Under the pieces are notes generated by a model. It saw only the letters and a list, made by a program, of their open reading frames with translations, was not told the origin of the DNA and ran no database searches. A DNA stretch of 19,487 nucleotides, taken from Octopus sinensis (lineage: Eukaryota). Positions 212 through 19,439 of the stretch are shown piece by piece. Location: the NCBI RefSeq assembly GCF_006345805.1, contig NW_021824214.1, forward strand, positions 1 to 19,487, in the 5' to 3' direction. The translations under genes and the position numbers were made by a program. Position 1 is the stretch's first letter; each line of letters opens with the position of its first letter.

Positions 212-498
212 ATAGCAATGTCTATATGCCAACAGAATGTGGCAGTCCTATAAAGGACGATGTTATTGTTGTTAGCTTGTGGTTGTCTTACACTGAGGAT
301 GGACAACATCCAGAAACCTAGTTCGGTAAGCATCACTTAAGGCTAGAGATTGGAGCGATGACCTCCCTTGCAAACGCTATACGGACACAAACTGTGTGTC
401 GATAGCCAGCTGGAAAAGAGGCTTTCCTGAGATTAAAACAACAGTAACATCGTCTTTTATAGGACGGTCACATTCTGTTGGCATATAAACATTACTAT
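212..498 (+). mobile_element. Small inverted-repeat element with a central hammerhead motif (Penelope-like remnant or MITE)
   Basis: 62-bp inverted arms at 212-273 and 437-498 (ATAGCAATGTCTATATGCCAACAGAATGT... matches the reverse complement ATAGTAATGTTTATATGCCAACAGAATGT...). The right end runs into (TA)n. An HHR motif lies in the spacer. Confidence 0.7.
287..330 (+). ncRNA. Minimal type I hammerhead ribozyme motif (degenerate)
   Basis: CTTACA-CTGAGGA-TGGA(CAACA)TCCA-GAAA-CCTAGT-T-C-GGTAAG. Core intact, 4-bp stem II, stem III one substitution from the palindrome ACCTAGGT, stem I 5 bp with an A.G closing mismatch. Confidence 0.65.
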
Positions 499-1510: not shown

Positions 1511-1825
1511 GTAGAGTCACGCATCACTGCTGTGTATTTGTCTCCATTACAATAGTTTCGCAGCAACTGAACAAACACCAGCTTCGTATATAAAACTGAC
1601 ATTAAACTGTGGAATATATTACTTATATAGAAACACTCACCTGAACTCATCAAAAAATATTTAAATAAACAAAACACAAACAGAATAAATAAACCATAAT
1701 AAAATAGGAATTGACAATAAAAGTAATATATATTCAATTCACTCGTTTATTCTTTTATTCTTATATACGTGTGTCATTTATATTATGTATATGTGTGTGT
1801 ATGTGTATATATATGTATGTATATC

Positions 1826-1860
<35 letters not shown>

Positions 1861-1897
1861 ATACGTATATACATACATACATATATACATATACATA

Positions 1898-2076
1898 GGT
1901 GTAGGAGTGGCTGTGTGATAAGTAGCTTGCTTACGAACCACATGGTTCCGGGTTCAGTCCCACTGCGTCGCACCTTGGCCAAGTGTCTTCTACTATAACC
2001 TCGGGCCGACCAAAGCCTTGTGAGTGGTAGACGGAAACTGAAAGAAGCCCGTCGTATATATGTATATATATATATG

Positions 2077-2110
<34 letters not shown>

Positions 2111-2355
2111 TGTATGTATGTATGTATGTATGTGTGCGTATGTTTGTGTGTCTGTGTTTGTCCACCCAACATTGCTTGACAACCGATGCTGGTGTGTTTA
2201 CATCCCCTTAATCTAGCGGTTCAGCAAAAGAATCCGATAGAATAAGTACTAGGCTTACAAAGAATAAGTCCTGGGGTCGATTTGGTCGACTACAGGTGGT
2301 GCTCCAGCATGGCCGCAGTCAAATTTCTGAAACAAGTAAAAGAGTAAAAGAGTAT
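1898..2355 (+). mobile_element. tRNA-derived SINE, family 1 (bipartite, internal TATG microsatellite)
   Basis: A-box-like TGGCTGTGTGAT and B-box GGTTCAGTCCC head; CORE-like CACCTTGGCCAAGTG; body to GAAGCCCGTCG; (TATG)n; second module ending AAGTAAAAGAGTAAAAGAG. A reverse-complement copy lies at 14295-14682. Confidence 0.88.
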
Positions 2356-2562
2356 ATTATATATATAGATATATACTAAGCAATAAGGTGTTCAGCAACG
2401 AGTTGCCTTACCACATACCGAATTTAGAAATAGCAGTCAAAGGGTAAGCTATTTCTTCACTAAAAAGGGAGATCTCATAAAAACAGAATTGGAGGATGCT
2501 GACACAAACAGGTAAGAGAGAATAATGAATTAACCGCAATCTATCAAACATTTTTAAAGTTA

Positions 2563-2671
2563 TCCACGGACGTACGTTTCGAAATCAAGTTTTAGGAAAG
2601 CATAAGAATTAAAATATTAAATATTAAATAATTCTATCCTTACCGAAACTTCTTTTCTCTTCAGCGTGGAA
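2563..2671 (-). ncRNA. Type I hammerhead ribozyme, array copy (intact)
   Basis: Reverse complement of TCCACG-CTGAAGA-GAAA...TTTC-GAAA-CGTACG-T-C-CGTGGA. Confidence 0.85.
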
Positions 2672-3166
2672 TACTATAATCATAAATGATTATATATTGA
2701 ATTTTGAGATACTAGGAGGTACCACTCAACTCAGTATCAGAGCGAGCTAGAATCCTCAACTAGTATCACCGAATTCAAATTTGTGAATGAAACGATTGTG
2801 TCAACCCCTTCCCACCCGCGTGTAGCCAAAACAAGATGCTGTATCATCTACTGAGATAAAATATGGTTATCCGTAATAATGAAAGGGGTGAAATTAATTA
2901 ATTTGGAATAATTATCAATTACACCAAGTAGTCTTCGGCATGTAAAATCCTCATTTGAGGAAAATTTAAGTAATACTCCAATAAGGGTTCAGCAACGCGA
3001 GTTGCCTTACCACATAACCGAATTTAGAAATAGCAGTCAAAGGGTTATAGCTATTTCTTCTACTAAAAAGGGAGATCTCAGTAAAAACAGCAATTGGAAG
3101 GCTGACACAAACAGGTAAGAGAGAATGAATTAACCAACCGCAATCTATCAAACATTTTTAAAGTTA

Positions 3167-3271
3167 TCCACGGACGTACGTTTCGAAATCAAGTTTTAGG
3201 AAGCATAAGAATTAAAATATTAAATATTAATAATTCTATCTTACCGAAACTTCTTTTCTCTTCAGCGTGGA
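3167..3271 (-). ncRNA. Type I hammerhead ribozyme, array copy (intact)
   Basis: Same motif, all core nucleotides present. Confidence 0.85.
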
Positions 3272-3767
3272 ATACTATAATCATAAATGATTATATATTG
3301 AATTTTGAGATACTAGGAGTTACCAAACTCAACTCAGTATCAGAGCGAGCTAGAATCCTCAACTAGTATCACCGAATTCAATTTTGTGAATGAAACGATT
3401 GTGTCACAGCCCCTTCCCACCCGCGTGTAGCCAAAACAAGATGCTGTAGTCATCTACTGAGATAAAATATGGTTATCCGTAATAATGAAGGGTGAATTAT
3501 TAATTTGGAATAATATCAATTACACCAAGTAGTCTTCGGCATGTAAAAGCCTCATTTGAGAGGAAAATTTAAGTAATACTAAGCAATAAGGGTTCAGCAA
3601 AACGAGTTGCCTTACCACTACCGAATTTAGAAATAGCAGTCAAAGGGTTATAGCTATTTCTTCTACTAAAAAGGGAGATCTCAGTAAAAACAGCAATTGG
3701 AAGGCTGACACAAACAGGTTAAGAGAGAATGAATTAACCGCAATCTATCAAAACATTTTTAAAGTTA

Positions 3768-3872
3768 TCCACGGACTACGTTTCGAAATCAAGTTTTAGG
3801 AAAGCATAAGAATTAAAATATTAAATATTAAATAATTCTATCTTACCGAAACTTCTTTTCTCTTCAGCGTGA
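3768..3872 (-). ncRNA. Type I hammerhead ribozyme, array copy (two 1-nt deletions)
   Basis: GGACTACG instead of GGACGTACG (stem III) and CGTGAAT instead of CGTGGAAT (stem I); may be sequencing errors. Confidence 0.7.
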
Positions 3873-3974
3873 ATACTATAATCATAAATGATTATATATT
3901 TAATTTTGAGATACTAGGAGGTACCAACTCAACACTCAGTAAGAGCGAGCTAGAATCCTCAACTAGTATCACCG

Positions 3975-4076
3975 GCTGAAGAGAAAAGAAGTTTCGGTAA
4001 GATAGAATTATTTAATATTTAATATTTTAATTCTTATGCTTTCCTAAAACTTGATTTCGAAACGTACGTCCGTGGA
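3975..4076 (+). ncRNA. Type I hammerhead ribozyme, junction copy (5' strand of stem I lost)
   Basis: Core CTGAAGA at 3976-3982, GAAA at 4059-4062, GTC site ending 4070. The inversion junction replaces TCCAC of stem I. Confidence 0.7.
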
Positions 4077-4566
4077 TAACTTTAAAAATGTTTGATAGAT
4101 TGCGGTTAATTCATTCTCTCTTACCTGTTTGTGTCAGCCTTCCAATTGCTGTTTTTACTGAGATCTCCCTTTTTAGTAGAAGAATAGCTATAACCCTTTG
4201 ACTGCTATTTCTAAATTCGGTATGTGGTAAGGCAACTCGTTGCTGAACCCTATTGCTTAGTATTACTTAAATTTTCCTCAAATGAGGCTTTTACATGCCG
4301 AAGACTACTTGGTGTAATTGATAATTATTCCAATTAATTAATTTCACCCTTCATTATTACGGATAACCATATTTTATCTCAGTAGATGACTACAGCATCT
4401 TTTTTTGGCTACACGCGGGTGGGAAGGGGCTGTTGACACAATCGTTTCATTCACAAATTTGAATTCGGTGATACTAGTTGAGGATTCTAGCTCGCTCTGA
4501 TACTGAGTTAGTTGGTACCTCCTAGTATCTCAAAATTCAATATATAATCATTTATGATTATAGTAT

Positions 4567-4672
4567 TCCACGCTGAAGAAAAAGAAGTTTCGGTAAGATA
4601 GAATTATTTAATATTTAATATTTTAATTCTTATGCTTCCCTAAAACTTGATTTCGAAACGTACGTCCGTGGA
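4567..4672 (+). ncRNA. Type I hammerhead ribozyme, array copy (G10.1 deleted)
   Basis: CTGAAGAAAAAG instead of CTGAAGAGAAAAG; rest intact; GTC site ends 4666. Confidence 0.75.
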
Positions 4673-5160
4673 TAACTTTAAAAATGTTTGATAGATTGCG
4701 GTTATTCATTCTCTCTTACCTGTTTGTGTCAGCCTTCCAATTGCTGTTTTTACTGAGATCTCCCTTTTTAGTAGAAGAATAGCTATAACCCTTTGACTGC
4801 TATTTCTAAATTCGGTATGTGGTAAGGCAACTCGTTGCTGAACCCTTATTGCTTAGTATTACTTAAATTTTCCTCAATGAGGCTTTTACATGCCGAAGAC
4901 TACTGGTGTAATTGATAATTATTCCAAATTAATTAATTTCACCCTTCATTATTACGGATAACCATATTTATCTCAGTAGATGACTACAGCATCTTGTTTT
5001 GGCTACACGCGGGTGGGAAGGGGCTGTTGACACAATCGTTTCATTCACAATTTGAATTCGGTGATACTAGTTGAGGATTCTAGCTCGCTCTGATACTGAG
5101 TTGAGTTTGTACCTCCTAGTATCTCAAAATTCAATATATAATCATTTATGATTATAGTAT

Positions 5161-5267
5161 TCCACGCTGAAGAGAAAAGAAGTTTCGGTAAGATAGAATT
5201 ATTTAATATTTAATATTTTAATTCTTATGCTTTCCTAAAACTTGATTTCGAAACGTACGTCCGTGGA
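5161..5267 (+). ncRNA. Type I hammerhead ribozyme, array copy (intact)
   Basis: Stem I TCCACG 5161-5166 / CGTGGA 5262-5267; CTGAAGA 5167-5173; stem II GAAA 5174-5177 / TTTC 5246-5249 (G10.1-C11.1); GAAA 5250-5253; palindromic stem III ACGTACGT 5253-5260; C17 at 5261 (GUC). Confidence 0.9.
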
Positions 5268-5761
5268 TAACTTTAAAAATGTTTGATAGATTGCGGTTAA
5301 TTCATTCTCTCTTACCTGTTTTGTTCAGCCTTCCAATTGCTGTTTTTACTGAGATCTCCCTTTTAGTAGAAGAAATAGCTATAACCCTTTGACTGCTATT
5401 TCTAAATTCGGTATGTGGTAAGGCAACTCGTGCTGAACCCTTATTGCTTAGTATTACTTAAATTTTCCTCAAATGAGGCTTTTACATGCCGAAGACTACT
5501 TGGTGTAATTGAATTATTCCAAATTAATTAATTTCACACCCTTCATTATTACGGATAACCATATTTTATCTCAGTAGATGACTACACAGCATCTTGTTTT
5601 GGCTACACGCGGGTGGGAAGGGGCTGTTGACACAATCGTTTCATTCACAAATTTGAATTCGGTGATACTAGTTGAGGATTCTAGCTCGCTCTGATACTGA
5701 GTTGAGTTGGTACCTCCTAGTATCTCAAAATTCAATATATAATCATTTATGATTATAGTAT

Positions 5762-5868
5762 TCCACGCTGAAGAGAAAAGAAGTTTCGGTAATGTAGAAT
5801 TATTTAATATTTAATATTTTAATTCTTATGCTTTCCTAAAACTTGATTTCGAAACGTACGTCCGTGGA
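5762..5868 (+). ncRNA. Type I hammerhead ribozyme, array copy (intact)
   Basis: Same motif; GTC site ends 5862. Confidence 0.88.
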
Positions 5869-6362
5869 TAACTTTAAAAATGTTTGATAGATTGCGGTTA
5901 ATTCATTCTCTCTTACCTGTTTGTGTCAGCCTTCCATTGCTGTTTTTACTGAGATCTCCCTTTTTAGTAGAAGAATAGCTATAACCCTTTGACTGCTATT
6001 TCTAAATTCGGTATGTGGTAAGGCAACTCGTTGCTGAACCCTTATTGCTTAGTATTACTTAAATTTTCCTCAAATGAGGCTTTTACATGCCGAAGACTAC
6101 TTGGTGTAATTGATAATTATTCCAAATAATTAATTAATTCACACCCTTCATTATTACGGATAACCATATTTTATCTCGTAGATGACTACAGCATCTTGTT
6201 TTGGCTACACGCGGTGGGAAGGGGCTGTTGACACAATCGTTTCATTCACAAATTTGAATTCGGTGATACTAGTTGAGGATTCTAGCTCGCTCTGATACTG
6301 AGTTGAGTTGGTACCATCCTAGTATCTCAAAATCAATATATAATCATTTATGATTATAGTAT

Positions 6363-6471
6363 TCCACGCTGAAGAGAAAAGAATTTCGGTAAGATAGAAT
6401 TATTTAATATTTAATATTTTAATTCTTATGCTTCCTTCCTAAAACTTGATTTCGAAACGTACGTCCGTGGA
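6363..6471 (+). ncRNA. Type I hammerhead ribozyme, array copy (core intact)
   Basis: Same motif; GTC site ends 6465; small indels only in the distal stem II extension. Confidence 0.85.
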
Positions 6472-6965
6472 TACTTTAAAAATGTTTGATAGATTGCGGT
6501 TAATTCATTCTCTCTTACCTGTTTGTGTCAGCCTTCCAATTGCTGTTTTTACTGAGATCTCCCTTTTTAGTAGAAGAAATAGCTAAACCCTTTGACTGCT
6601 ATTTCTAAATTCGGTATGTGGTAAGGCAACTCGTTGCTGAACCCTTATTGCTTAGTATTACTTAAATTTTCCTCAAATGAGGCTTTTACATGCCGAAGAC
6701 TACTTGGTGTAATTGATAATTATTCCAAATTAATTAATTTCACCCTTCATTATTACGGATAACCATATTTTATCTCAGTAGATGACTACAGCATCTTGTT
6801 TTGGCTACACGCGGGTGGGAAGGGGCTGTTGACACACAATCGTTTCATTCACAAATTTGAATTCGGTGATACTAGTTGAGGATTCTAGCTCGCTCTGATA
6901 CTGAGTTGAGTTGGTACCTCCTAGTATCTCAAAATTCAATATATAATCATTTATGATTATAGTAT

Positions 6966-7071
6966 TCCACGCTGAAGAGAAAAGAAGTTTCGGTAAGATA
7001 GAATTATTTAATATTTAATATTTTAATTCTTTGCTTTCCTAAAACTTGATTTCGAAACGTACGTCCGTGGA
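6966..7071 (+). ncRNA. Type I hammerhead ribozyme, array copy (intact)
   Basis: Same motif; GTC site ends 7065. Confidence 0.88.
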
Positions 7072-7434
7072 TAACTTTAAAAATGTTTGATAGATTGCGG
7101 TTAATTCATTCTCTCTTACCTGTTTGTGTCAGCCTTCCAATTGCTGTTTTTACTGAGATCTCCCTTTTTAGTAGAAAAAATAGCTATAACCCTTTGACTG
7201 CTATTTCTAAATTCGGTATGTGGTAAGGCAACTCGTTGCCTGAACCCTTATTGCTTAGTATTACTTAAATTTTCCTCAATGAGGCTTTTACATGCCGAAG
7301 ACTACTTGGTGTAATTGATAATTATTCCAAATTAATTAATTTCACCCTTCATTATTACGGATATATATATATATTATATATATGTATGTGTGTATACGTA
7401 TACATACACACACATACACACATGCACAAACACA

Positions 7435-7468
<34 letters not shown>

Positions 7469-7541
7469 TTTCTTCTTTTCAGTTACACTTTTATGTGAAA
7501 AATGAACATAAATTGAAGTCTGAGTATCACATTTATTTTTA

Positions 7542-7653
7542 CAGGGGATAAGTTAAACAGTGACTTCGAAGTTTCACCGGTTGTGACTTTGTCAGACGCT
7601 GTGACACAGCTTCAACCGGTGAATGCTCTATATCACTATCAACCTTTCCCTTG
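7542..7653. mobile_element. Short palindromic Tc1/mariner-like MITE
   Basis: TA|CAGGGGATAAGTT ... AACCTTTCCCTTG|TA with flanking TA at 7540-41 and 7654-55; internal perfect inverted 11-mer TTCACCGGTTG/CAACCGGTGAA. Confidence 0.65.
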
Positions 7654-7999
7654 TAAAATTACACACACACACACATACACGTACGTACTCTAAGTCACAC
7701 ACATACACATGCGTGCAAGCACACAAACACATTAATTAATGAAACTTTAAACCCTGCAAATGCGCAGATTAGTCTATCCACTTCGGTGCTAGTCTAAGTT
7801 ATGACTGCTTTTTATTAGAAACAAGACAGTACAGAAACAGCACATCAAACAGGATTGAAATGAAGGCATGATTCTATGATGGTTAGTTAAAAGGTATCTA
7901 GCTAAATGGATGAAGAATATATCTGATGGCTATGGAAAAGGAATATTTATTCGGCTGAAAGTCGAGAGTTTTGGAGGGGACAAATGAAAAAGAGGCTTG

Positions 8000-8228
8000 C
8001 TGTATTTTACCGGCGTACAAGTCGACGTTGTCCATAGTGTAAACATGTAGTGTTAGAATTTAAACATCGTCACTATCTTTCCAAGTACAGCTACATTTTG
8101 CACTGAATATTTTGTCCTCCAAAGTTCTCTTGGTGTCGACCAACGTACTTCTGGGGGATGAAGATAGACAGAGAGGGGCGCTGTAAATTTTGGGCTTAAA
8201 ACTCGACTTGTATGCCAGAAAATAGCGG
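8000..8228. mobile_element. pogo/Tc2-like MITE
   Basis: Imperfect TIRs CTGTATTTTACCGGCGTACAAGTCGA / TCGACTTGTATGCCAGAAAATAGCGG, resembling the CCGTATTT-type termini of Tc2/pogo-group elements; TA TSD not preserved. Confidence 0.6.
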
Positions 8229-9192: not shown

Positions 9193-9760
9193 GGCGAGCT
9201 TGGCAGAAATGTTAGCACGCCCTCACGAAATGCTTAGCGGTACTTCGTCTGCCGTTACGTTCTGAGTTCAAATTTCGCCGAGGTCGACTTTGCCTTTCAT
9301 CCTTTCGGGGTCGATTGAATAAGTACCTGTTACGCACTGGGGTCGATATAATCGCCTTAATCCGTTTGTTCTTGTTTGTCCTCTGTGTGTTTAGCCCCTT
9401 GTGGGTAGTAAAGAAATAGGTATTTCGTCTGTTGTTACGTTCTGAGTTCAAATTCCGCCGAGGTCGACTTTGCCTTTCATCTTTTTGGGGCCGATTAAAT
9501 AAGTACCAGTTGCGCACTGGGGTCGATATAATCAACTTAATCTGTTTGTCTGTCCTTGTTTGTCCTCTCTGTGTTTAGCCTCCTGTGGGTAGAGAAGAAA
9601 TAGGTATCTGTTTTTATGCTCTGAGCTCAAATTCAGCCGAGGTCGACTTTACCTTTCGGGATCGATAAATTATGTAGCAGTTGCGTACTGGGGTCGATCT
9701 AATCGACTGGCCGCCTCTTCAAAATTTTCGGGCCTTGTGACTAGTGTAGAGAAGATTATT
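9193..9760 (+). mobile_element. tRNA-derived SINE, family 2, head-to-tail trimer
   Basis: Head GGCGAGCTTGGCAGAAATGTTAG, B-box GAGTTCAAAT, central GTCGACTTTGCCTTTCATCCTTTCGGGGTCGA domain. The body repeats at a ~180-184 bp period (9239, 9419, 9603); the third unit has a different tail. A monomer lies at 19169-19403. Confidence 0.88.
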
Positions 9761-11630: not shown

Positions 11631-12182
11631 CAAGTATATGTATATTATAGGTATATATTATACATGTGCAATGTACTCATATAGAATATATGAGTGTGTG
11701 TGCCTGTGTGTGTGCCTCTGTGTGTGTGTGTGCCTGTGTGTGTGTGCCTGTGTGTGTGTGCCTGTGTGTGTGTGAGAGAGAGAGAGAGAATAGATGTATA
11801 TAGCTATGCATATGCATACACACACACACACATATATATATATATACATACATATATATATATATGTGTGTGTGTGTGTGTATGTGTGTGTATGCATTTA
11901 TGTATTTATGTATAAATTCTGTTTAGCTGTTTCTGTTGTGTATGCATACTTATATGTATACGTGCACTGTATTCTTATAGAATATGTATGTGTGTGTATG
12001 TGTGTGTAAGTGTGTGTGTGTGCGTGTGAGTGTGTGTGTATTATATCTGATTAGTAATTTCTATTTGGAAGGCAGTATTGTTTGTTTTGGCAGAGATGCT
12101 GGACTAGGTAGGAATCTCTCTCCTTGGCTCGGGTATGGTTCCTCGCTTGAAATATTCACTTCACAACATCGCAGCTGGATAA

Positions 12183-12266
12183 GACCCTGAAGAAGCTGCA
12201 CCGATAATAATGCCAGGCTGCATGTGCAACTGCCAGTAGTCTGTGCGGCAGAAACACGTGTTGGTC
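12183..12266 (+). ncRNA. Type I hammerhead ribozyme motif (Penelope-like)
   Basis: GACC-CTGAAGA-A-GCTGCAC...GTGCGGC-A-GAAA-CACGTG-T-T-GGTC: 4-bp stem I, 7-bp stem II, palindromic stem III ACACGTGT, GUU site; A.A at 10.1/11.1. Confidence 0.7.
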
Positions 12267-12572
12267 ATAATAATATACTGTATAAAATTGTTAAATAAGA
12301 GAAAATAAATTTTGAGGATGAACAAATTTTCCATATTTTATATAATTATTACTAATATATTGCTCCAAATAATATTACTGTCCAGTGAAGCGAACCCGGG
12401 ATTACTTATCGGAAGAATCCACAGAGAGACTGACAGCTAATAGCAGTCACAGACCTTGAATACTGATCGATGTGGTTAGCCGTAAACTGGAACCGAACTG
12501 AGAGCCATCACGGTATCTGGCCGGATAATGTATCCCTGAAAACTCTCTCTCTCTCTCTTTTACACTCACACA

Positions 12573-12720: not shown

Positions 12721-13222
12721 ATACAAAATAAGAAAATGGAGAAATACATCTAAATCAAATATCAATTACCAGATAATACTCAATCACATACTTTATTATA
12801 CCAACACATAAGAAACTATAGGGTTAAACATAAAAAAGTAGAGCAAAACAGTGTACATAAAGGAGTATACATAAAAAAGTGTACATAAAAGAGTAAAGTT
12901 ATACAATAAGTAGAATATATATAAGAGAATATAAATGTAAGTAAATATAAATATAAATATAGATTACATCTTACAGCTGTTTCGGCCATGTAGATAAGTA
13001 TGTCTCATTCATCTTATATTAGCCTTTTATGGTAGGTCAGTATAACATTACTCTTTTATGTACACTTTTTATGCATACTCCTTTATGTACACTGTTTTGC
13101 TCTACTTTTTTATGTTTAACCCTATAGTTTCTTATGTGGTGGTATAATAAAGTATGTGATTGAGTATTATCTGGTAATTGATATTTGATTTAGATGTATT
13201 TTTCCATTTTCTTATTTTGTAT
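12721..13222 (-). mobile_element. Inverted-repeat element (~184-bp arms) with a hammerhead 3'-half in the spacer
   Basis: Arms 12721-12904 and 13040-13222 differ at about 5 positions. The spacer reads GGCC-GAAA-CAGCTG-T-A on the minus strand (12972-12987). The left end abuts (TA)n. Confidence 0.8.
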
Positions 13223-14294: not shown

Positions 14295-14682
14295 TACTCT
14301 TTTACTCTTTTACTTGTTTCAGTCATTTGACTGCGGCCATGCTGGAGCACCGCCTTTAATCGAGCAACTTATTCTTTGTAAGGACTTATTCTTTGTAAGC
14401 CCAGTACTTATTCTATCGGTCTCTTTTGCCGAACCGCTAAGTGACGGGGACATAAACACACCAGCATCGGTTGTCAAGCAATGCTTGGGGGTCAAACACA
14501 GACACACATACATACACGCACATATATATATATACATATATACGACGGGCTTCTTTCAGTTTCCATCTACCAAATTCACTCACAAGGGTTTGGTCGGCCC
14601 GAGGCTATAGTAGAAAGACACTTGTGGGACTGAACCCGGAACTATGTGGCTGGTAAACAAGCTACTTACCACACAGCCACTC
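14295..14682 (-). mobile_element. tRNA-derived SINE, family 1
   Basis: Reverse complement of the 1898-2355 element, with a shorter internal microsatellite, an ~18-bp deletion in the CORE-like segment and a duplicated CTTATTCTTTGTAAG. Confidence 0.88.
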
Positions 14683-14754
14683 ACGGGTTTTTTTTTTCTC
14701 TAACATTTTCACTTCTTTATTGTCCACTTGCCACCGCAATTGCCATCGCCGAAT

Positions 14755-15523: not shown

Positions 15524-15611
15524 TATAGAAGACACTTGGCCAAGGTGCCGCGCAGTGGCACTGAACCCGAAACCACATGGAAGGGAGGCGAATTTCTCAT
15601 CCAGCCACCTA
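15524..15611 (-). mobile_element. SINE family 1-related 5' fragment
   Basis: TAGAAGACACTTGGCCAAGGTGCCGCGCAGTGGCACTGAACCCGAAACCACATGG is the reverse complement of the family 1 head and CORE-like segment. Confidence 0.75.
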
Positions 15612-15715
15612 CATATATGAAACATATGTGTATACACGGACGCGCGCGCGTACATACACACACATTTTTTTATCTTTTGCATATTTCAGTCACTGGACCC
15701 TAGCCATGCCGGGGC

Positions 15716-17223: not shown

Positions 17224-17322
17224 TAATAAATACATATCCAACTGTACTTCTTGACTCCAATTTCTTCAATTTTATATTCACATAAGACGACCGCCCAAGT
17301 TAAAATTTGGAAGTATATGATA

Positions 17323-17463
17323 TTAGGTTGTCCCAAAAGTTCGTAAACACTTGCGAAATTTGAATTTTTACTCGCCAAGTACTAACAAAAACAACAAAAA
17401 TTATTCCTCAAAATAAAGACCATTATTTTCCAAGACTTTCTACGAACTTTTGGGACAACCTTA
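17323..17463. mobile_element. Mariner-like MITE (141 bp)
   Basis: 23-bp TIRs TTAGGTTGTCCCAAAAGTTCGTA / TACGAACTTTTGGGACAACCTTA (1 mismatch), flanked by TA on both sides. Confidence 0.85.
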
Positions 17464-17468
17464 TAATA

Positions 17469-17728
17469 CAGGGTGTCCCAAAAGTCTCTCCGCAGTAAGT
17501 TTTCACTGGAAAATGAATATATATAAGATGGTATAAAACTAGAAAAGAATATATTAGACTTTACAAGACTTTAAAAAACTTTACAAGAGGTGTTCAAACT
17601 GTCGTTCTTCGTTTTTAAGACATAAGTTGACTCTTCTACAGATGTTTTGAAATACCTCTTGGAGAAACTGACTCTTGGAGAGTCAGGATATAAAAAAATC
17701 ACTACGGAGAGACTTTTTGAACACCCTA
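17469..17728. mobile_element. Tc1/mariner-like MITE (260 bp)
   Basis: 28-bp TIRs CAGGGTGTCCCAAAAGTCTCTCCGCAGT / ACTACGGAGAGACTTTTTGAACACCCTA (24/28 match), TA at 17467-68 and 17729-30. Confidence 0.82.
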
Positions 17729-18118
17729 TACCAACTATAGCATTGGGTAATCTCGAAGGTGGACAAATTTTCTATTGTACTCTTCCACGTTTCTAACGAA
17801 ATATAACATAACTATGTGTGTGTGTATACACACACACACCACACACACACTTGATTGTGATGTTGAACTTAAAAATGGTCTATGACTATTTAATTTTTTC
17901 CCACTAGGCCGCTGGTGGCAAAAAAATTCTACAAAATTTTTTTTGCCACCCTATATTGATTATTATGATTTTCTGGTTAATTCCGTAATGGAATCGGCGG
18001 CTTATATTATTTGCTGCCGATAAATTGGCGCGAGTGCGATGATTTGAAAATTTTAGGTCAGATATTGCCGAGGCAGGGACGGGAATGCCTCGTGAAAAAT
18101 ATCTGTTCCGACTTGGCT

Positions 18119-18225
18119 ATTTCTTACTGATGAATCTAAGGGCCTATGGTAGATTGGCTTGATTTAATTTAATCAGGTTAGTTTACCATTAAACAGTAGA
18201 CGAAACGGTGCATCGTATAAGAAAT
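18119..18225 (+). ncRNA. Type I hammerhead ribozyme motif (near-intact)
   Basis: ATTTCTTA-CTGATGA-A-TCTA...TAGA-C-GAAA-CGGTGCATCG-T-A-TAAGAAAT: 8-bp stem I, intact core, near-palindromic stem III, GUA site; A.C at 10.1/11.1. Confidence 0.78.
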
Positions 18226-19168: not shown

Positions 19169-19403
19169 GGCGGCGAGCTGGCAGAAACGTTAGCACGCCG
19201 GGCGAAATGCTTAGCGGTATTTCGTCTGCGTTACGTTGTGAGTTCAAATTCCGCCGAGGTCGACTTTTCCTTTCATCCTTTCGGGGTCGATAAATTAAGT
19301 ACCAGTTACGCACTGGGGTCGATGTAATCGACTTAATACCTATGTCTGTCCTTGTTTGTCCCCTCTGTGTTTAGCCCCTTGTGGGTAATAAAGAAATAGG
19401 TAT
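19169..19403 (+). mobile_element. tRNA-derived SINE, family 2, full-length monomer with TSD
   Basis: A/B-box head and same body as the 9193 trimer; exact 17-bp direct repeat GGTATATAATTTAATCA at 19152-19168 and 19399-19415. Confidence 0.92.
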
Positions 19404-19439
19404 ATAATTTAATCATTACATCTACAATAGACAAATAGA

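What the first reader, a model, noticed from the sequence alone, without database searches (positions are those of the whole stretch)
2374..7362. Retrozyme-like array: a hammerhead ribozyme in every ~600-bp unit
Seen: each unit has TCCACG-CTGAAGA-GAAA...TTTC-GAAA-CGTACG-TC-CGTGGA with all conserved core nucleotides, G10.1-C11.1 and a GUC site. There are 9 copies, 6 intact. Plus-strand cleavage sites at 4070, 4666, 5261, 5862, 6465 and 7065 are 595-603 nt apart, and the unit has no substantial ORF. Known: tandem type I HHR repeats (newt satellite 2, schistosome Sm-alpha, cave-cricket pDo500, metazoan non-LTR retrozymes) are transcribed and self-processed to monomers, which in retrozymes circularise; loopless palindromic stem III motifs of Penelope-like elements cleave as dimers, which a tandem array favours. 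Inference: a non-autonomous ribozyme retroelement producing ~600-nt linear or circular RNA, larger than the roughly 170-500-nt metazoan units I know of. I cannot tell whether this family is already described.
Basis: partly seen in the sequence, partly recalled or inferred. Interest (0 to 1): 0.92.

Follow-up and report, generated by a model that had tools for sequence, protein, structure and literature searches.

The report
Hammerhead-ribozyme tandem repeat (animal retrozyme type)
A 5-kb block of nearly identical 600-bp non-coding repeats, each carrying a complete type I hammerhead self-cleaving RNA motif, fits the known class of animal "non-LTR retrozymes" (ribozyme satellites thought to be copied by Penelope-like retrotransposons), so it is a real but fairly ordinary new member of a known kind.

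Summary
Window 2373-7363 is an array of about 600-bp units.

The motif has every conserved core base, a 6-bp helix I, a G10.1-C11.1 pair opening a long helix II, and a 2-bp helix III with a palindromic tetraloop. Two copies can pair through that palindrome into an 8-bp helix. A strict descriptor found nothing in 300 shuffles. Rfam Hammerhead_1 aligns full length but below threshold (21.6 against 34 bits), because of a 72-nt insert in helix II.

The unit has no ORF, 34% GC, and folds far better than shuffles (z -5.8), with helix I closing the monomer.

It sits in a short (TA)n tract just after a SINE. That is the published insertion signature of Penelope-like elements.

The 600-nt size is not exceptional; a 2026 preprint reports families of 51-972 bp.

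I found no relatives, no expression data and no autonomous partner, so cleavage, circularisation and mobility remain inferred.

Verdict: new member of a known kind, moderate-to-low interest.

The parts
2373..3974 (-). Left arm: about 2.7 units in inverted orientation. In element sense it runs from unit position 398 at the junction to position 194 at the left flank.
   Evidence: Inverted-repeat pairs between 2524-3974 and the plus arm are 92-100% complementary. Sequence read.
3975..7363 (+). Right arm: about 5.7 units in direct orientation. It runs from unit position 505 (last base of the helix I 5' strand) to position 297.
   Evidence: Direct-repeat families with 594-604-nt spacing, alignment A1, boundary mapping.
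5161..5267 (+). Intact type I hammerhead; C17 at 5261, cleavage predicted after 5261. This copy is aligned full length by Rfam Hammerhead_1.
   Evidence: (RF00163, model positions 1-45 of 45, 21.6 bits, E 0.0032 in a 151-nt search); fold.
5762..5868 (+). Intact hammerhead, C17 at 5862.
6363..6471 (+). Intact hammerhead, C17 at 6465.
6966..7071 (+). Intact hammerhead, C17 at 7065.
4567..4672 (+). Hammerhead with G10.1 lost through a 1-nt deletion (CTGAAGA-AAAAG); C17 at 4666.
3975..4076 (+). 5'-truncated hammerhead at the inversion junction. It lacks all of the 5' strand of helix I except its last base (G3975); C17 at 4070.
2563..2670 (-). Intact hammerhead on the minus strand, C17 at 2569.
3167..3271 (-). 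Intact hammerhead on the minus strand, C17 at 3173.
3768..3873 (-). Damaged hammerhead on the minus strand (TTCACG in helix I, CGTAG in helix III; two 1-nt deletions), C17 at 3774.
2353..2372 (.). Left flank: a short (TA)-rich tract directly after the 3' end of a tRNA-derived SINE (which ends at 2352). It contains TATATTATATATAT, a possible target-site duplication.
   Evidence: the second SINE copy ends with the same ...GTAAAAGAGTAAAAGAG.
7364..7383 (.). Right flank: a (TA)-rich tract containing the same 14-mer TATATTATATATAT, followed by a (TG/TA) microsatellite.

Best explanation
The block is a genomic copy of a non-autonomous, hammerhead-bearing tandem repeat of the metazoan 'non-LTR retrozyme' or ribozyme-satellite class.

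Proposed mechanism, with each step marked as shown or inferred:

(a) Shown: each 600-nt unit encodes, on one polarity only, a complete type I hammerhead.

(b) Shown by prediction: in a unit-length RNA, helix I pairs the two ends (CGUGGA at 1-6 with UCCACG at 500-505). [quoted passage not shown]

(c) Inferred from the family: read-through transcription of the array gives multimers, which the ribozyme cuts after GUC into 600-nt monomers. It could act as a single motif (2-bp helix III with a GUAC loop, as in invertebrate retrozymes). More efficiently, it could act as a double hammerhead in which two neighbouring motifs share an 8-bp ACGUACGU helix III.

(d) Inferred: a host RtcB-type ligase circularises the monomers.

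(e) Inferred from the locus anatomy: a Penelope-like element's reverse transcriptase and GIY-YIG endonuclease copied a circular or multimeric RNA round and round into a (TA)n target. Priming from both nicked strands would give two head-to-head arms whose 3' ends face outward and whose 5'-truncated ends meet in the middle.
For: - Motif anatomy: all core bases present (C3-A9 = CUGAAGA, G12A13A14, A15.1-U16.1, C17), G10.1-C11.1, and a 6/6 helix I.
- Strict descriptor: 0 hits in 300 shuffles.
- Rfam Hammerhead_1 is the best family over the motif. It aligns full length, and its consensus GAAACGcgCGUC matches GAAACGUACGUC here.
- Helix lengths are 6 bp (I) and 4 bp (II) before internal loops. That is the geometry stated for canonical metazoan type I hammerheads in PMC4209133.
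- The double-hammerhead cofold is -52.2 kcal/mol against 2 x -19.9, with an 8-bp intermolecular helix III.
- The 600-nt monomer folds at -163.8 kcal/mol, z -5.76. Pair probabilities within it are 0.86-1.0 for helix I and 0.93-0.97 for the base of helix II.
- The ribozyme polarity folds 34 kcal/mol better than its complement (z -5.76 against -3.45).
- No ORF; 34% GC; ribozyme on one polarity only.
- It meets the 'active retrozyme' criteria of the 2026 preprint: at least 2 consecutive units with complete hammerheads and a motif MFE below -5 kcal/mol.
- A head-to-head inverted 5'-truncated copy plus a (TA)n target is the published insertion hallmark of Penelope-like elements (PMC8557442).
- No arm-specific fixed differences, consistent with one event.
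Against: - The Rfam score is below the gathering cut-off (21.6 against 34 bits). The hit is invisible in window-scale searches; scaled to the whole window its E-value would be about 0.4.
- All nine motifs are copies of one sequence, so there is no covariation or cross-species conservation.
- No relatives were found in any searchable collection.
- There are no transcript data.
- The base of helix II is weak: one G-C pair followed by three A-U pairs. The usual loop 2 is replaced by a long extension, so the tertiary contact that makes natural hammerheads fast cannot be checked.
- In the 2026 preprint, 8 of 9 predicted Xenopus retrozyme dimers did not cleave in vitro.
- No RT or GIY-YIG remnant was found among the ten longer, non-repetitive ORFs of the window scanned against Pfam.
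- Only one locus of the family is visible, so mobility is not shown.
Confidence: 0.7

Rival explanations
1. It is an ordinary satellite or segmental duplication that grew and was partly inverted at the DNA level (unequal crossing-over, replication template switching). It carries a relic or fortuitous hammerhead-like motif with no present RNA-level activity.
For: The copies are almost identical with no shared substitutions, which local DNA amplification also explains. Rfam is below threshold. There is no expression evidence and no second locus. Most predicted Xenopus retrozymes were inactive in vitro.
Against: The core and all three helices are complete, with 0 hits in 300 shuffles. The unit ends defined by the cleavage site are paired by helix I inside an unusually stable fold that is stronger on the ribozyme strand. 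The arm ends are at arbitrary unit positions, abut (TA)n, and have 3' ends facing outward, as expected for target-primed reverse transcription and not for unequal crossing-over.
Confidence: 0.15
2. It is not an independent non-autonomous family. It is a run of the terminal (pseudo-LTR) part of an autonomous Penelope-like element, that is, extremely 5'-truncated tandem and inverted copies of a full-length element located elsewhere in the genome.
For: Penelope-like elements carry type I hammerheads in their pseudo-LTRs, and they insert as partial tandems with an inverted 5'-truncated copy and a (TA)n bias. Xenopus retrozymes are sequence relatives of pseudo-LTRs.
Against: A strict 600-nt period over 5.7 plus 2.7 laps needs a 600-nt circular or multimeric template, not a 3-4-kb element RNA. 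The window has no RT or GIY-YIG remnant among the ORFs scanned and no other sequence similar to the unit.
Confidence: 0.1
3. The copy number, the inversion and the damaged motifs are partly assembly or read artefacts of a noisy long-read assembly.
For: Differences between copies are overwhelmingly private 1-4-nt indels, often in homopolymers. Published work notes that tandem/inverted Penelope-like insertions are prone to misassembly.
Against: The two arms are not mirror images. They are phase-shifted by about 105 nt, so a missed-adapter or fold-back palindromic read does not explain the inversion. The flanks are unique and differ from each other.
Confidence: 0.1

Closest known systems
Metazoan non-LTR retrozymes (Cervera and de la Pena 2020, PMC7229834; Li, Clavereau and Pollet 2026, bioRxiv 10.64898/2026.07.22.740005)
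   Same: Tandem repeats with one type I hammerhead per unit, no ORF, GC below 45%, a highly self-paired monomer whose ends are joined by helix I, and a short palindromic helix III that allows dimeric cleavage. The unit length lies inside the reported 51-972 bp range.
   Different: Helix II is a roughly 76-nt three-segment hairpin instead of a 4-bp stem with a small loop. The locus is two head-to-head arms, an arrangement not mentioned in the parts of the retrozyme papers I read or searched. Expression and circles are not shown here. Host taxon unknown.
Hammerhead satellites: newt satellite 2 / axolotl HHR_Amex1 and HHR_Amex2, Schistosoma Sm-alpha, Dolichopoda pDo500
   Same: A transcribed-satellite type of organisation. 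The hammerhead is type I with a 1-2-bp helix III and a palindromic loop. Double-hammerhead processing of multimers has been described.
   Different: Those units are about 330-500 bp with compact 49-68-nt hammerheads.
Penelope-like elements and their pseudo-LTR min-hammerheads (Cervera and de la Pena 2014, PMC4209133; Craig et al. 2021, PMC8557442)
   Same: Type I hammerhead. Insertion architecture of partial tandems plus an inverted 5'-truncated copy upstream. Preference for (TA)n targets.
   Different: No RT/GIY-YIG ORF and a 600-bp rather than 3-4-kb period. The hammerhead has a real, if short, helix III and a 6-bp helix I, so it is the 'canonical metazoan' form and not the loopless min-HHR.
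Plant LTR retrozymes and viroid-like or HDV-like circular RNAs
   Same: A 600-nt-scale, highly structured, ribozyme-delimited RNA unit.
   Different: Plant retrozymes have type III hammerheads inside LTRs with PBS and PPT. Avsunviroid-type RNAs carry ribozymes on both polarities and are not encoded in DNA. Here there is one polarity only, encoded in DNA, with no LTR.

Membership tests
Hammerhead ribozyme, type I (Rfam RF00163) | Conserved catalytic core: C3 U4 G5 A6 N7 G8 A9, G12 A13 A14, A15.1-U16.1, H17 | tested here: met
   CUGAAGA ... GAAA ... U C present in all six intact copies. The Rfam alignment matches every core column.
Hammerhead ribozyme, type I (Rfam RF00163) | Three helices around the core with helix I open (type I topology) and a G10.1-C11.1 pair | tested here: met
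   Helix I is 6 bp UCCACG/CGUGGA. Helix II is G-C plus three A-U pairs, then an extended hairpin. Helix III is A-U, C-G with a GUAC loop.
Hammerhead ribozyme, type I (Rfam RF00163) | Covariance-model score at or above the curated gathering score (34 bits) | tested here: not met
   No hit at gathering or at E<=10 over 5 kb. 21.6 bits, E 0.0032, only when 151 nt are searched. The shortfall coincides with a 72-nt insertion in helix II.
Hammerhead ribozyme, type I (Rfam RF00163) | Site-specific self-cleavage after H17 | not testable with these tools
   Needs in vitro transcription or mapping of 5' ends.
Metazoan non-LTR retrozyme | Tandem repeats with a complete type I hammerhead in at least two consecutive units, and a motif MFE below -5 kcal/mol (criteria of bioRxiv 10.64898/2026.07.22.740005) | tested here: met
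   Four consecutive intact motifs on the + strand (5261-7065) and two on the - strand. Motif MFE -19.9 kcal/mol.
Metazoan non-LTR retrozyme | No protein-coding capacity; no LTR, PBS or PPT; low GC | tested here: met
   Longest stop-free stretch 80 codons. 34% GC. The unit is a simple tandem repeat. PBS and PPT were not specifically searched.
Metazoan non-LTR retrozyme | Highly self-paired unit-length RNA with ends brought together by the ribozyme | tested here: met
   z -5.76, 64% of bases paired as a circle, helix I probability 0.86-1.0.
Metazoan non-LTR retrozyme | Expression as linear and circular unit-length RNAs | not testable with these tools
   No transcriptome is available. A protein-database search with a stop-free reading-frame translation of the unit found nothing.
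Metazoan non-LTR retrozyme | Dispersed multi-locus family (evidence of mobility) | tested here: inconclusive
   Only this locus occurs in the window. There are no matches in the metagenome, viral or prokaryote collections, which do not cover animal genomes.
Penelope-like element (autonomous) | ORF with a telomerase-like RT and a GIY-YIG endonuclease | tested here: not met
   No ORF in the unit. No Pfam domain in the ten window ORFs scanned.
Penelope-like-element-type insertion (works like, not membership) | Partial tandem plus an adjacent inverted 5'-truncated copy; microsatellite (TA)n target | tested here: met
   A minus arm of 2.7 units lies head-to-head with a plus arm of 5.7 units. Both inner ends are at internal unit positions, and both outer ends abut TA tracts. 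Hallmark as described in PMC8557442.
Penelope-like min-HHR (loopless helix III) | No helix III or loop 3 nucleotides beyond the core; helix I 4-5 bp; active only as a dimer | tested here: not met
   Helix III has six extra nucleotides (CGUACG) and helix I is 6 bp. It matches the 'canonical metazoan' description in PMC4209133.

The most novel reading that the evidence does not exclude
The locus may be a fossil of twin-primed, rolling-circle reverse transcription of one circular retrozyme RNA by Penelope-like machinery. Both arms have their 3' ends outward, at UA-rich template sites abutting a (TA)n target. They have the same fractional length (about 397 and 393 nt beyond whole laps) and are phase-shifted by 103-107 nt at both ends. 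This would arise if two polymerases started about 105 nt apart on one circle and elongated equally, with later whole-unit expansion of one arm. If this pattern were general across loci, it would be the first structural read-out of how animal retrozymes are integrated and by which enzyme.
Probability: 0.15. Interest if true: 0.6.

Novelty: new member of a known kind. Interest (0 to 1): 0.3.

Why it matters
Hammerhead tandem repeats are already known to be abundant in animal genomes, so one more family changes little.

Two things are of modest value. The first is a hammerhead with a very long helix II that curated models miss. This shows that Rfam-threshold scans under-count such elements. The second is a clean single-insertion architecture: head-to-head arms, a (TA)n target, and arbitrary unit phases at the ends. 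It ties a retrozyme array to the insertion style of Penelope-like elements. Retrozyme reviews say no such clue exists in the repeats themselves (PMC7761336).

A genome-wide census of this family's junctions could test the rolling-circle, twin-priming model directly.

Tried and rejected
- Rfam at gathering threshold on the whole window and at E<=10 on 2300-7450 gave no hammerhead hit. The only hits there were sub-threshold miRNA models on the (TG/TA)n microsatellite at 7360-7450, which are low-complexity false positives.
- Tandem Repeats Finder cannot see the array because its longest period is 500.
- Exact and gapped hammerhead patterns were searched in metagenome, viral and prokaryote collections. 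The only hits, L001-L003, are one GC-rich sequence with no helix I complementarity and no similarity to the unit. I rejected them as chance.
- A protein-database search with the 80-codon stop-free translation of the unit, and another with a SINE-derived ORF, aimed to find spurious ORFs in animal assemblies. Both were empty.
- An exact-protein contig look-up for a window ORF was not on record.
- A SINE core searched in prokaryote and viral collections to identify the host found nothing. The host organism remains unidentified. My impression of an invertebrate, possibly a cephalopod, comes from memory only.
- A Pfam scan of ten window ORFs for RT or GIY-YIG remnants found nothing credible.
- pDo500 was considered as the family and rejected: its hammerhead is 49-68 nt and its unit 463-505 bp.
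- A missed-adapter palindrome artefact was considered and rejected because the arms are phase-shifted.
- Hammerhead-like matches at 287-330, 12181-12268, 16871 and 17117 were set aside as weak or chance. Their folds have z above -1 (for the two folded), and the one checked against Rfam gave no hit.

Full report
**1. What is there**

Reading 1800-8000 and the repeat finder show a block from about 2373 to 7363 built from a 600-bp unit. Direct-repeat families are spaced 593-605 nt apart on the right side. A set of long inverted-repeat pairs, 92-100% complementary, links 2524-3974 to that right side. So the block is not one uniform tandem array.

It has two arms:
- a minus-orientation arm, 2373-3974, about 2.7 units;
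- a plus-orientation arm, 3975-7363, about 5.7 units, joined head-to-head to the first.

Tandem Repeats Finder misses the array because its period limit is 500.

Seven cleavage-to-cleavage units align at 95% mean column identity and give a 600-nt consensus. Nearly all differences are private 1-4-nt indels with almost no shared variants. That fits either a very young array or noise from a long-read assembly. In the second case the three 'damaged' ribozymes may in fact be intact.

**2. The ribozyme motif**

An exhaustive scan of both strands finds UCCACG-CUGAAGA-G...(74-78 nt)...C-GAAA-CGUACG-UC-CGUGGA. On the plus strand C17 lies at 4666, 5261, 5862, 6465 and 7065. On the minus strand it lies at 2569, 3173 and 3774. 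A ninth copy at 3975-4076 (C17 at 4070) lacks the 5' strand of helix I because it starts at the inversion junction.

All core positions are present, and so is G10.1-C11.1. Helix I is a perfect 6 bp. Helix III is A15.1-U16.1 plus C-G, closed by the palindromic loop GUAC.

A strict descriptor gave 0 hits in 300 dinucleotide-preserving shuffles of the window with the array cut down to an 801-nt stretch holding two adjacent hammerhead motifs.

Rfam does not report the motif at its gathering threshold, nor at E<=10 over 5 kb. When only 151 nt are searched, so that the filters are lax, Hammerhead_1 (RF00163) aligns over its whole length (positions 1-45 of 45). It scores 21.6 bits against a cut-off of 34, with E 0.0032. 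The family consensus GAAACGcgCGUC lies opposite GAAACGUACGUC, and a 72-nt insertion sits where the model expects about 10 nt in helix II. The curated membership test is therefore formally not met. The reason is an insertion in a peripheral helix, not a defect in the core.

**3. Structure predictions**

The isolated motif folds with helix I and a three-segment helix II. That helix II consists of GAAA/UUUC, then AAGUUU/AAACUU, then a distal AU-rich hairpin. Helix I of 6 bp and helix II of 4 bp before an internal loop are the lengths given for canonical metazoan type I hammerheads (PMC4209133).

Two motifs cofold into the classical double hammerhead with an 8-bp ACGUACGU helix III. The energy is -52.2 kcal/mol against 2 x -19.9.

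The full 600-nt monomer folds at -163.8 kcal/mol, z -5.76. Positions 1-6 pair with 500-505 at probability 0.86-1.0, and the base of helix II pairs at 0.93-0.97. The cleavage products' ends are therefore held together, as ligation to a circle requires.

The complementary polarity folds 34 kcal/mol worse (z -3.45). This hints that the structure is selected on the ribozyme strand.

**4. Coding capacity and neighbours**

The consensus has no stop-free stretch above 80 codons. None of the ten window ORFs scanned against Pfam has a credible domain. No tRNA is found. Nothing else in the window resembles the unit.

The window is AT-rich, full of microsatellites, and carries SINE-like repeats. The array begins 20 nt after the 3' end of a tRNA-derived SINE, whose second copy at 14300-14690 ends with the same sequence.

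**5. Insertion anatomy**

Both outer edges abut short TA tracts. Both flanks contain the 14-mer TATATTATATATAT about 6 nt from the array. This may be a target-site duplication, but it is weak evidence in low-complexity DNA.

In element sense, both arms have their 3' ends outward, at unit positions 194 and 297, both UA-rich. Their 5' ends meet in the middle at positions 398 and 505.

An inverted 5'-truncated copy next to a partial tandem, and a (TA)n target bias, are the published hallmarks of insertions by Penelope-like elements (PMC8557442). A 600-nt period sustained over several laps needs a circular or multimeric 600-nt template. That is the retrozyme model (PMC7229834; PMC7761336).

One oddity is unexplained. 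The two arms have the same fractional length (397 and 393 nt beyond whole laps), so they are shifted by 103-107 nt at both ends. The chance of this is about 1.5% if the ends were independent. It argues against a mirror-image read artefact. It would fit twin priming on one circle followed by whole-unit expansion of one arm. This is inference only.

**6. Comparison with the literature**

Type I hammerheads in tandem repeats define metazoan non-LTR retrozymes. [quoted passage not shown]

A 2026 preprint reports family consensus lengths of 51-972 bp, with a mean of 650 bp in ray-finned fishes. It finds that the distributions of retrozymes and Penelope-like elements coincide in 32 of 35 species sampled, and that Xenopus retrozymes are sequence relatives of pseudo-LTRs. 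It also found that only 1 of 9 predicted dimers cleaved in vitro. The 600-nt size is therefore not exceptional, and a good motif does not guarantee activity.

The element is not an autonomous Penelope-like element, since it has no ORF. It is not the loopless min-HHR type, not a plant LTR retrozyme and not a viroid-like RNA. pDo500 has a compact 49-68-nt hammerhead and a 463-505-bp unit.

**7. Searches for relatives**

Exact and gapped hammerhead patterns found nothing relevant in the metagenome, viral or prokaryote collections. A translated-unit query and a SINE-ORF query found nothing in the protein collection. These resources do not cover animal genomes. The absence therefore says little, and I could not determine whether the family is already catalogued, nor the host species.

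**8. Verdict**

It is untested as a function, and its claim of unusual size does not hold.

It is a new member of a known kind. Two minor variant features are the very long helix II, which hides it from Rfam thresholds, and the clean head-to-head architecture. Interest is about 0.3.

Noticed in passing
window 18115-18225 (+): A solitary second hammerhead-like motif unrelated in sequence to the array. It has an 8-bp helix I (AUUUCUUA/UAAGAAAU), a CUGAUGA core, a helix II with a 19-bp stem, and GAAA followed by a near-palindromic CGGUGCAUCG, then UA. Its flaw is an A10.1-C11.1 mismatch. Fold z is -4.7. Rfam gives no hit at E<=10. It may be a decayed solo copy of another hammerhead-bearing element.
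   Followed up: partly
window 287-330 (+) and 12181-12268 (+): Two looser hammerhead-like matches with palindromic centres in helix III (CUAG, CACGUG). They have imperfect helix I and no G10.1-C11.1. Their folds are not better than shuffles, and 287-330 has no Rfam hit. Loose matches outside the array number 5, against 0.25 expected from shuffles, so some may be relics.
   Followed up: partly
window about 1895-2352 (+) and 14300-14690 (-); partial copy near 15560-15650: A composite tRNA-derived SINE with a B-box-like GGTTCCGGGTTCAGTCCC, an internal (TATG)n microsatellite and a 3' end ...GAAACAAGTAAAAGAGTAAAAGAG. The hammerhead array lies 20 nt downstream of one copy.
   Followed up: partly
window 9240-9625 (+, two tandem copies) and 19216-19420 (+): A second SINE-like family of about 180 bp (…GAGTTCAAATTCCGCCGAGGTCGACTTTGCCTTTCATCC…), with three copies about 90% alike.
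   Followed up: partly
window 12721-12877 / 13066-13222; 590-830; 17320-17470 and 17470-17730: There is a 157-nt inverted repeat, 98% complementary, with a 188-nt spacer (MITE- or foldback-like). There is a long palindrome at 590-830. Two short elements have mariner-like terminal inverted repeats (…GGTTGTCCCAAAAGT… and …GGGTGTCCCAAAAGTCTCTCCG…).
   Followed up: no
window 7360-7450: Sub-threshold Rfam matches to mir-297, mir-466 and other miRNA models fall on a (TG/TA)n microsatellite. These are low-complexity false positives.
   Followed up: yes
window 2373-7363: The two arms of the array have equal fractional lengths and a constant phase shift of about 105 nt at both the inner and outer ends. 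This is unexplained; see the notebook entry under 'unexplained'.
   Followed up: partly
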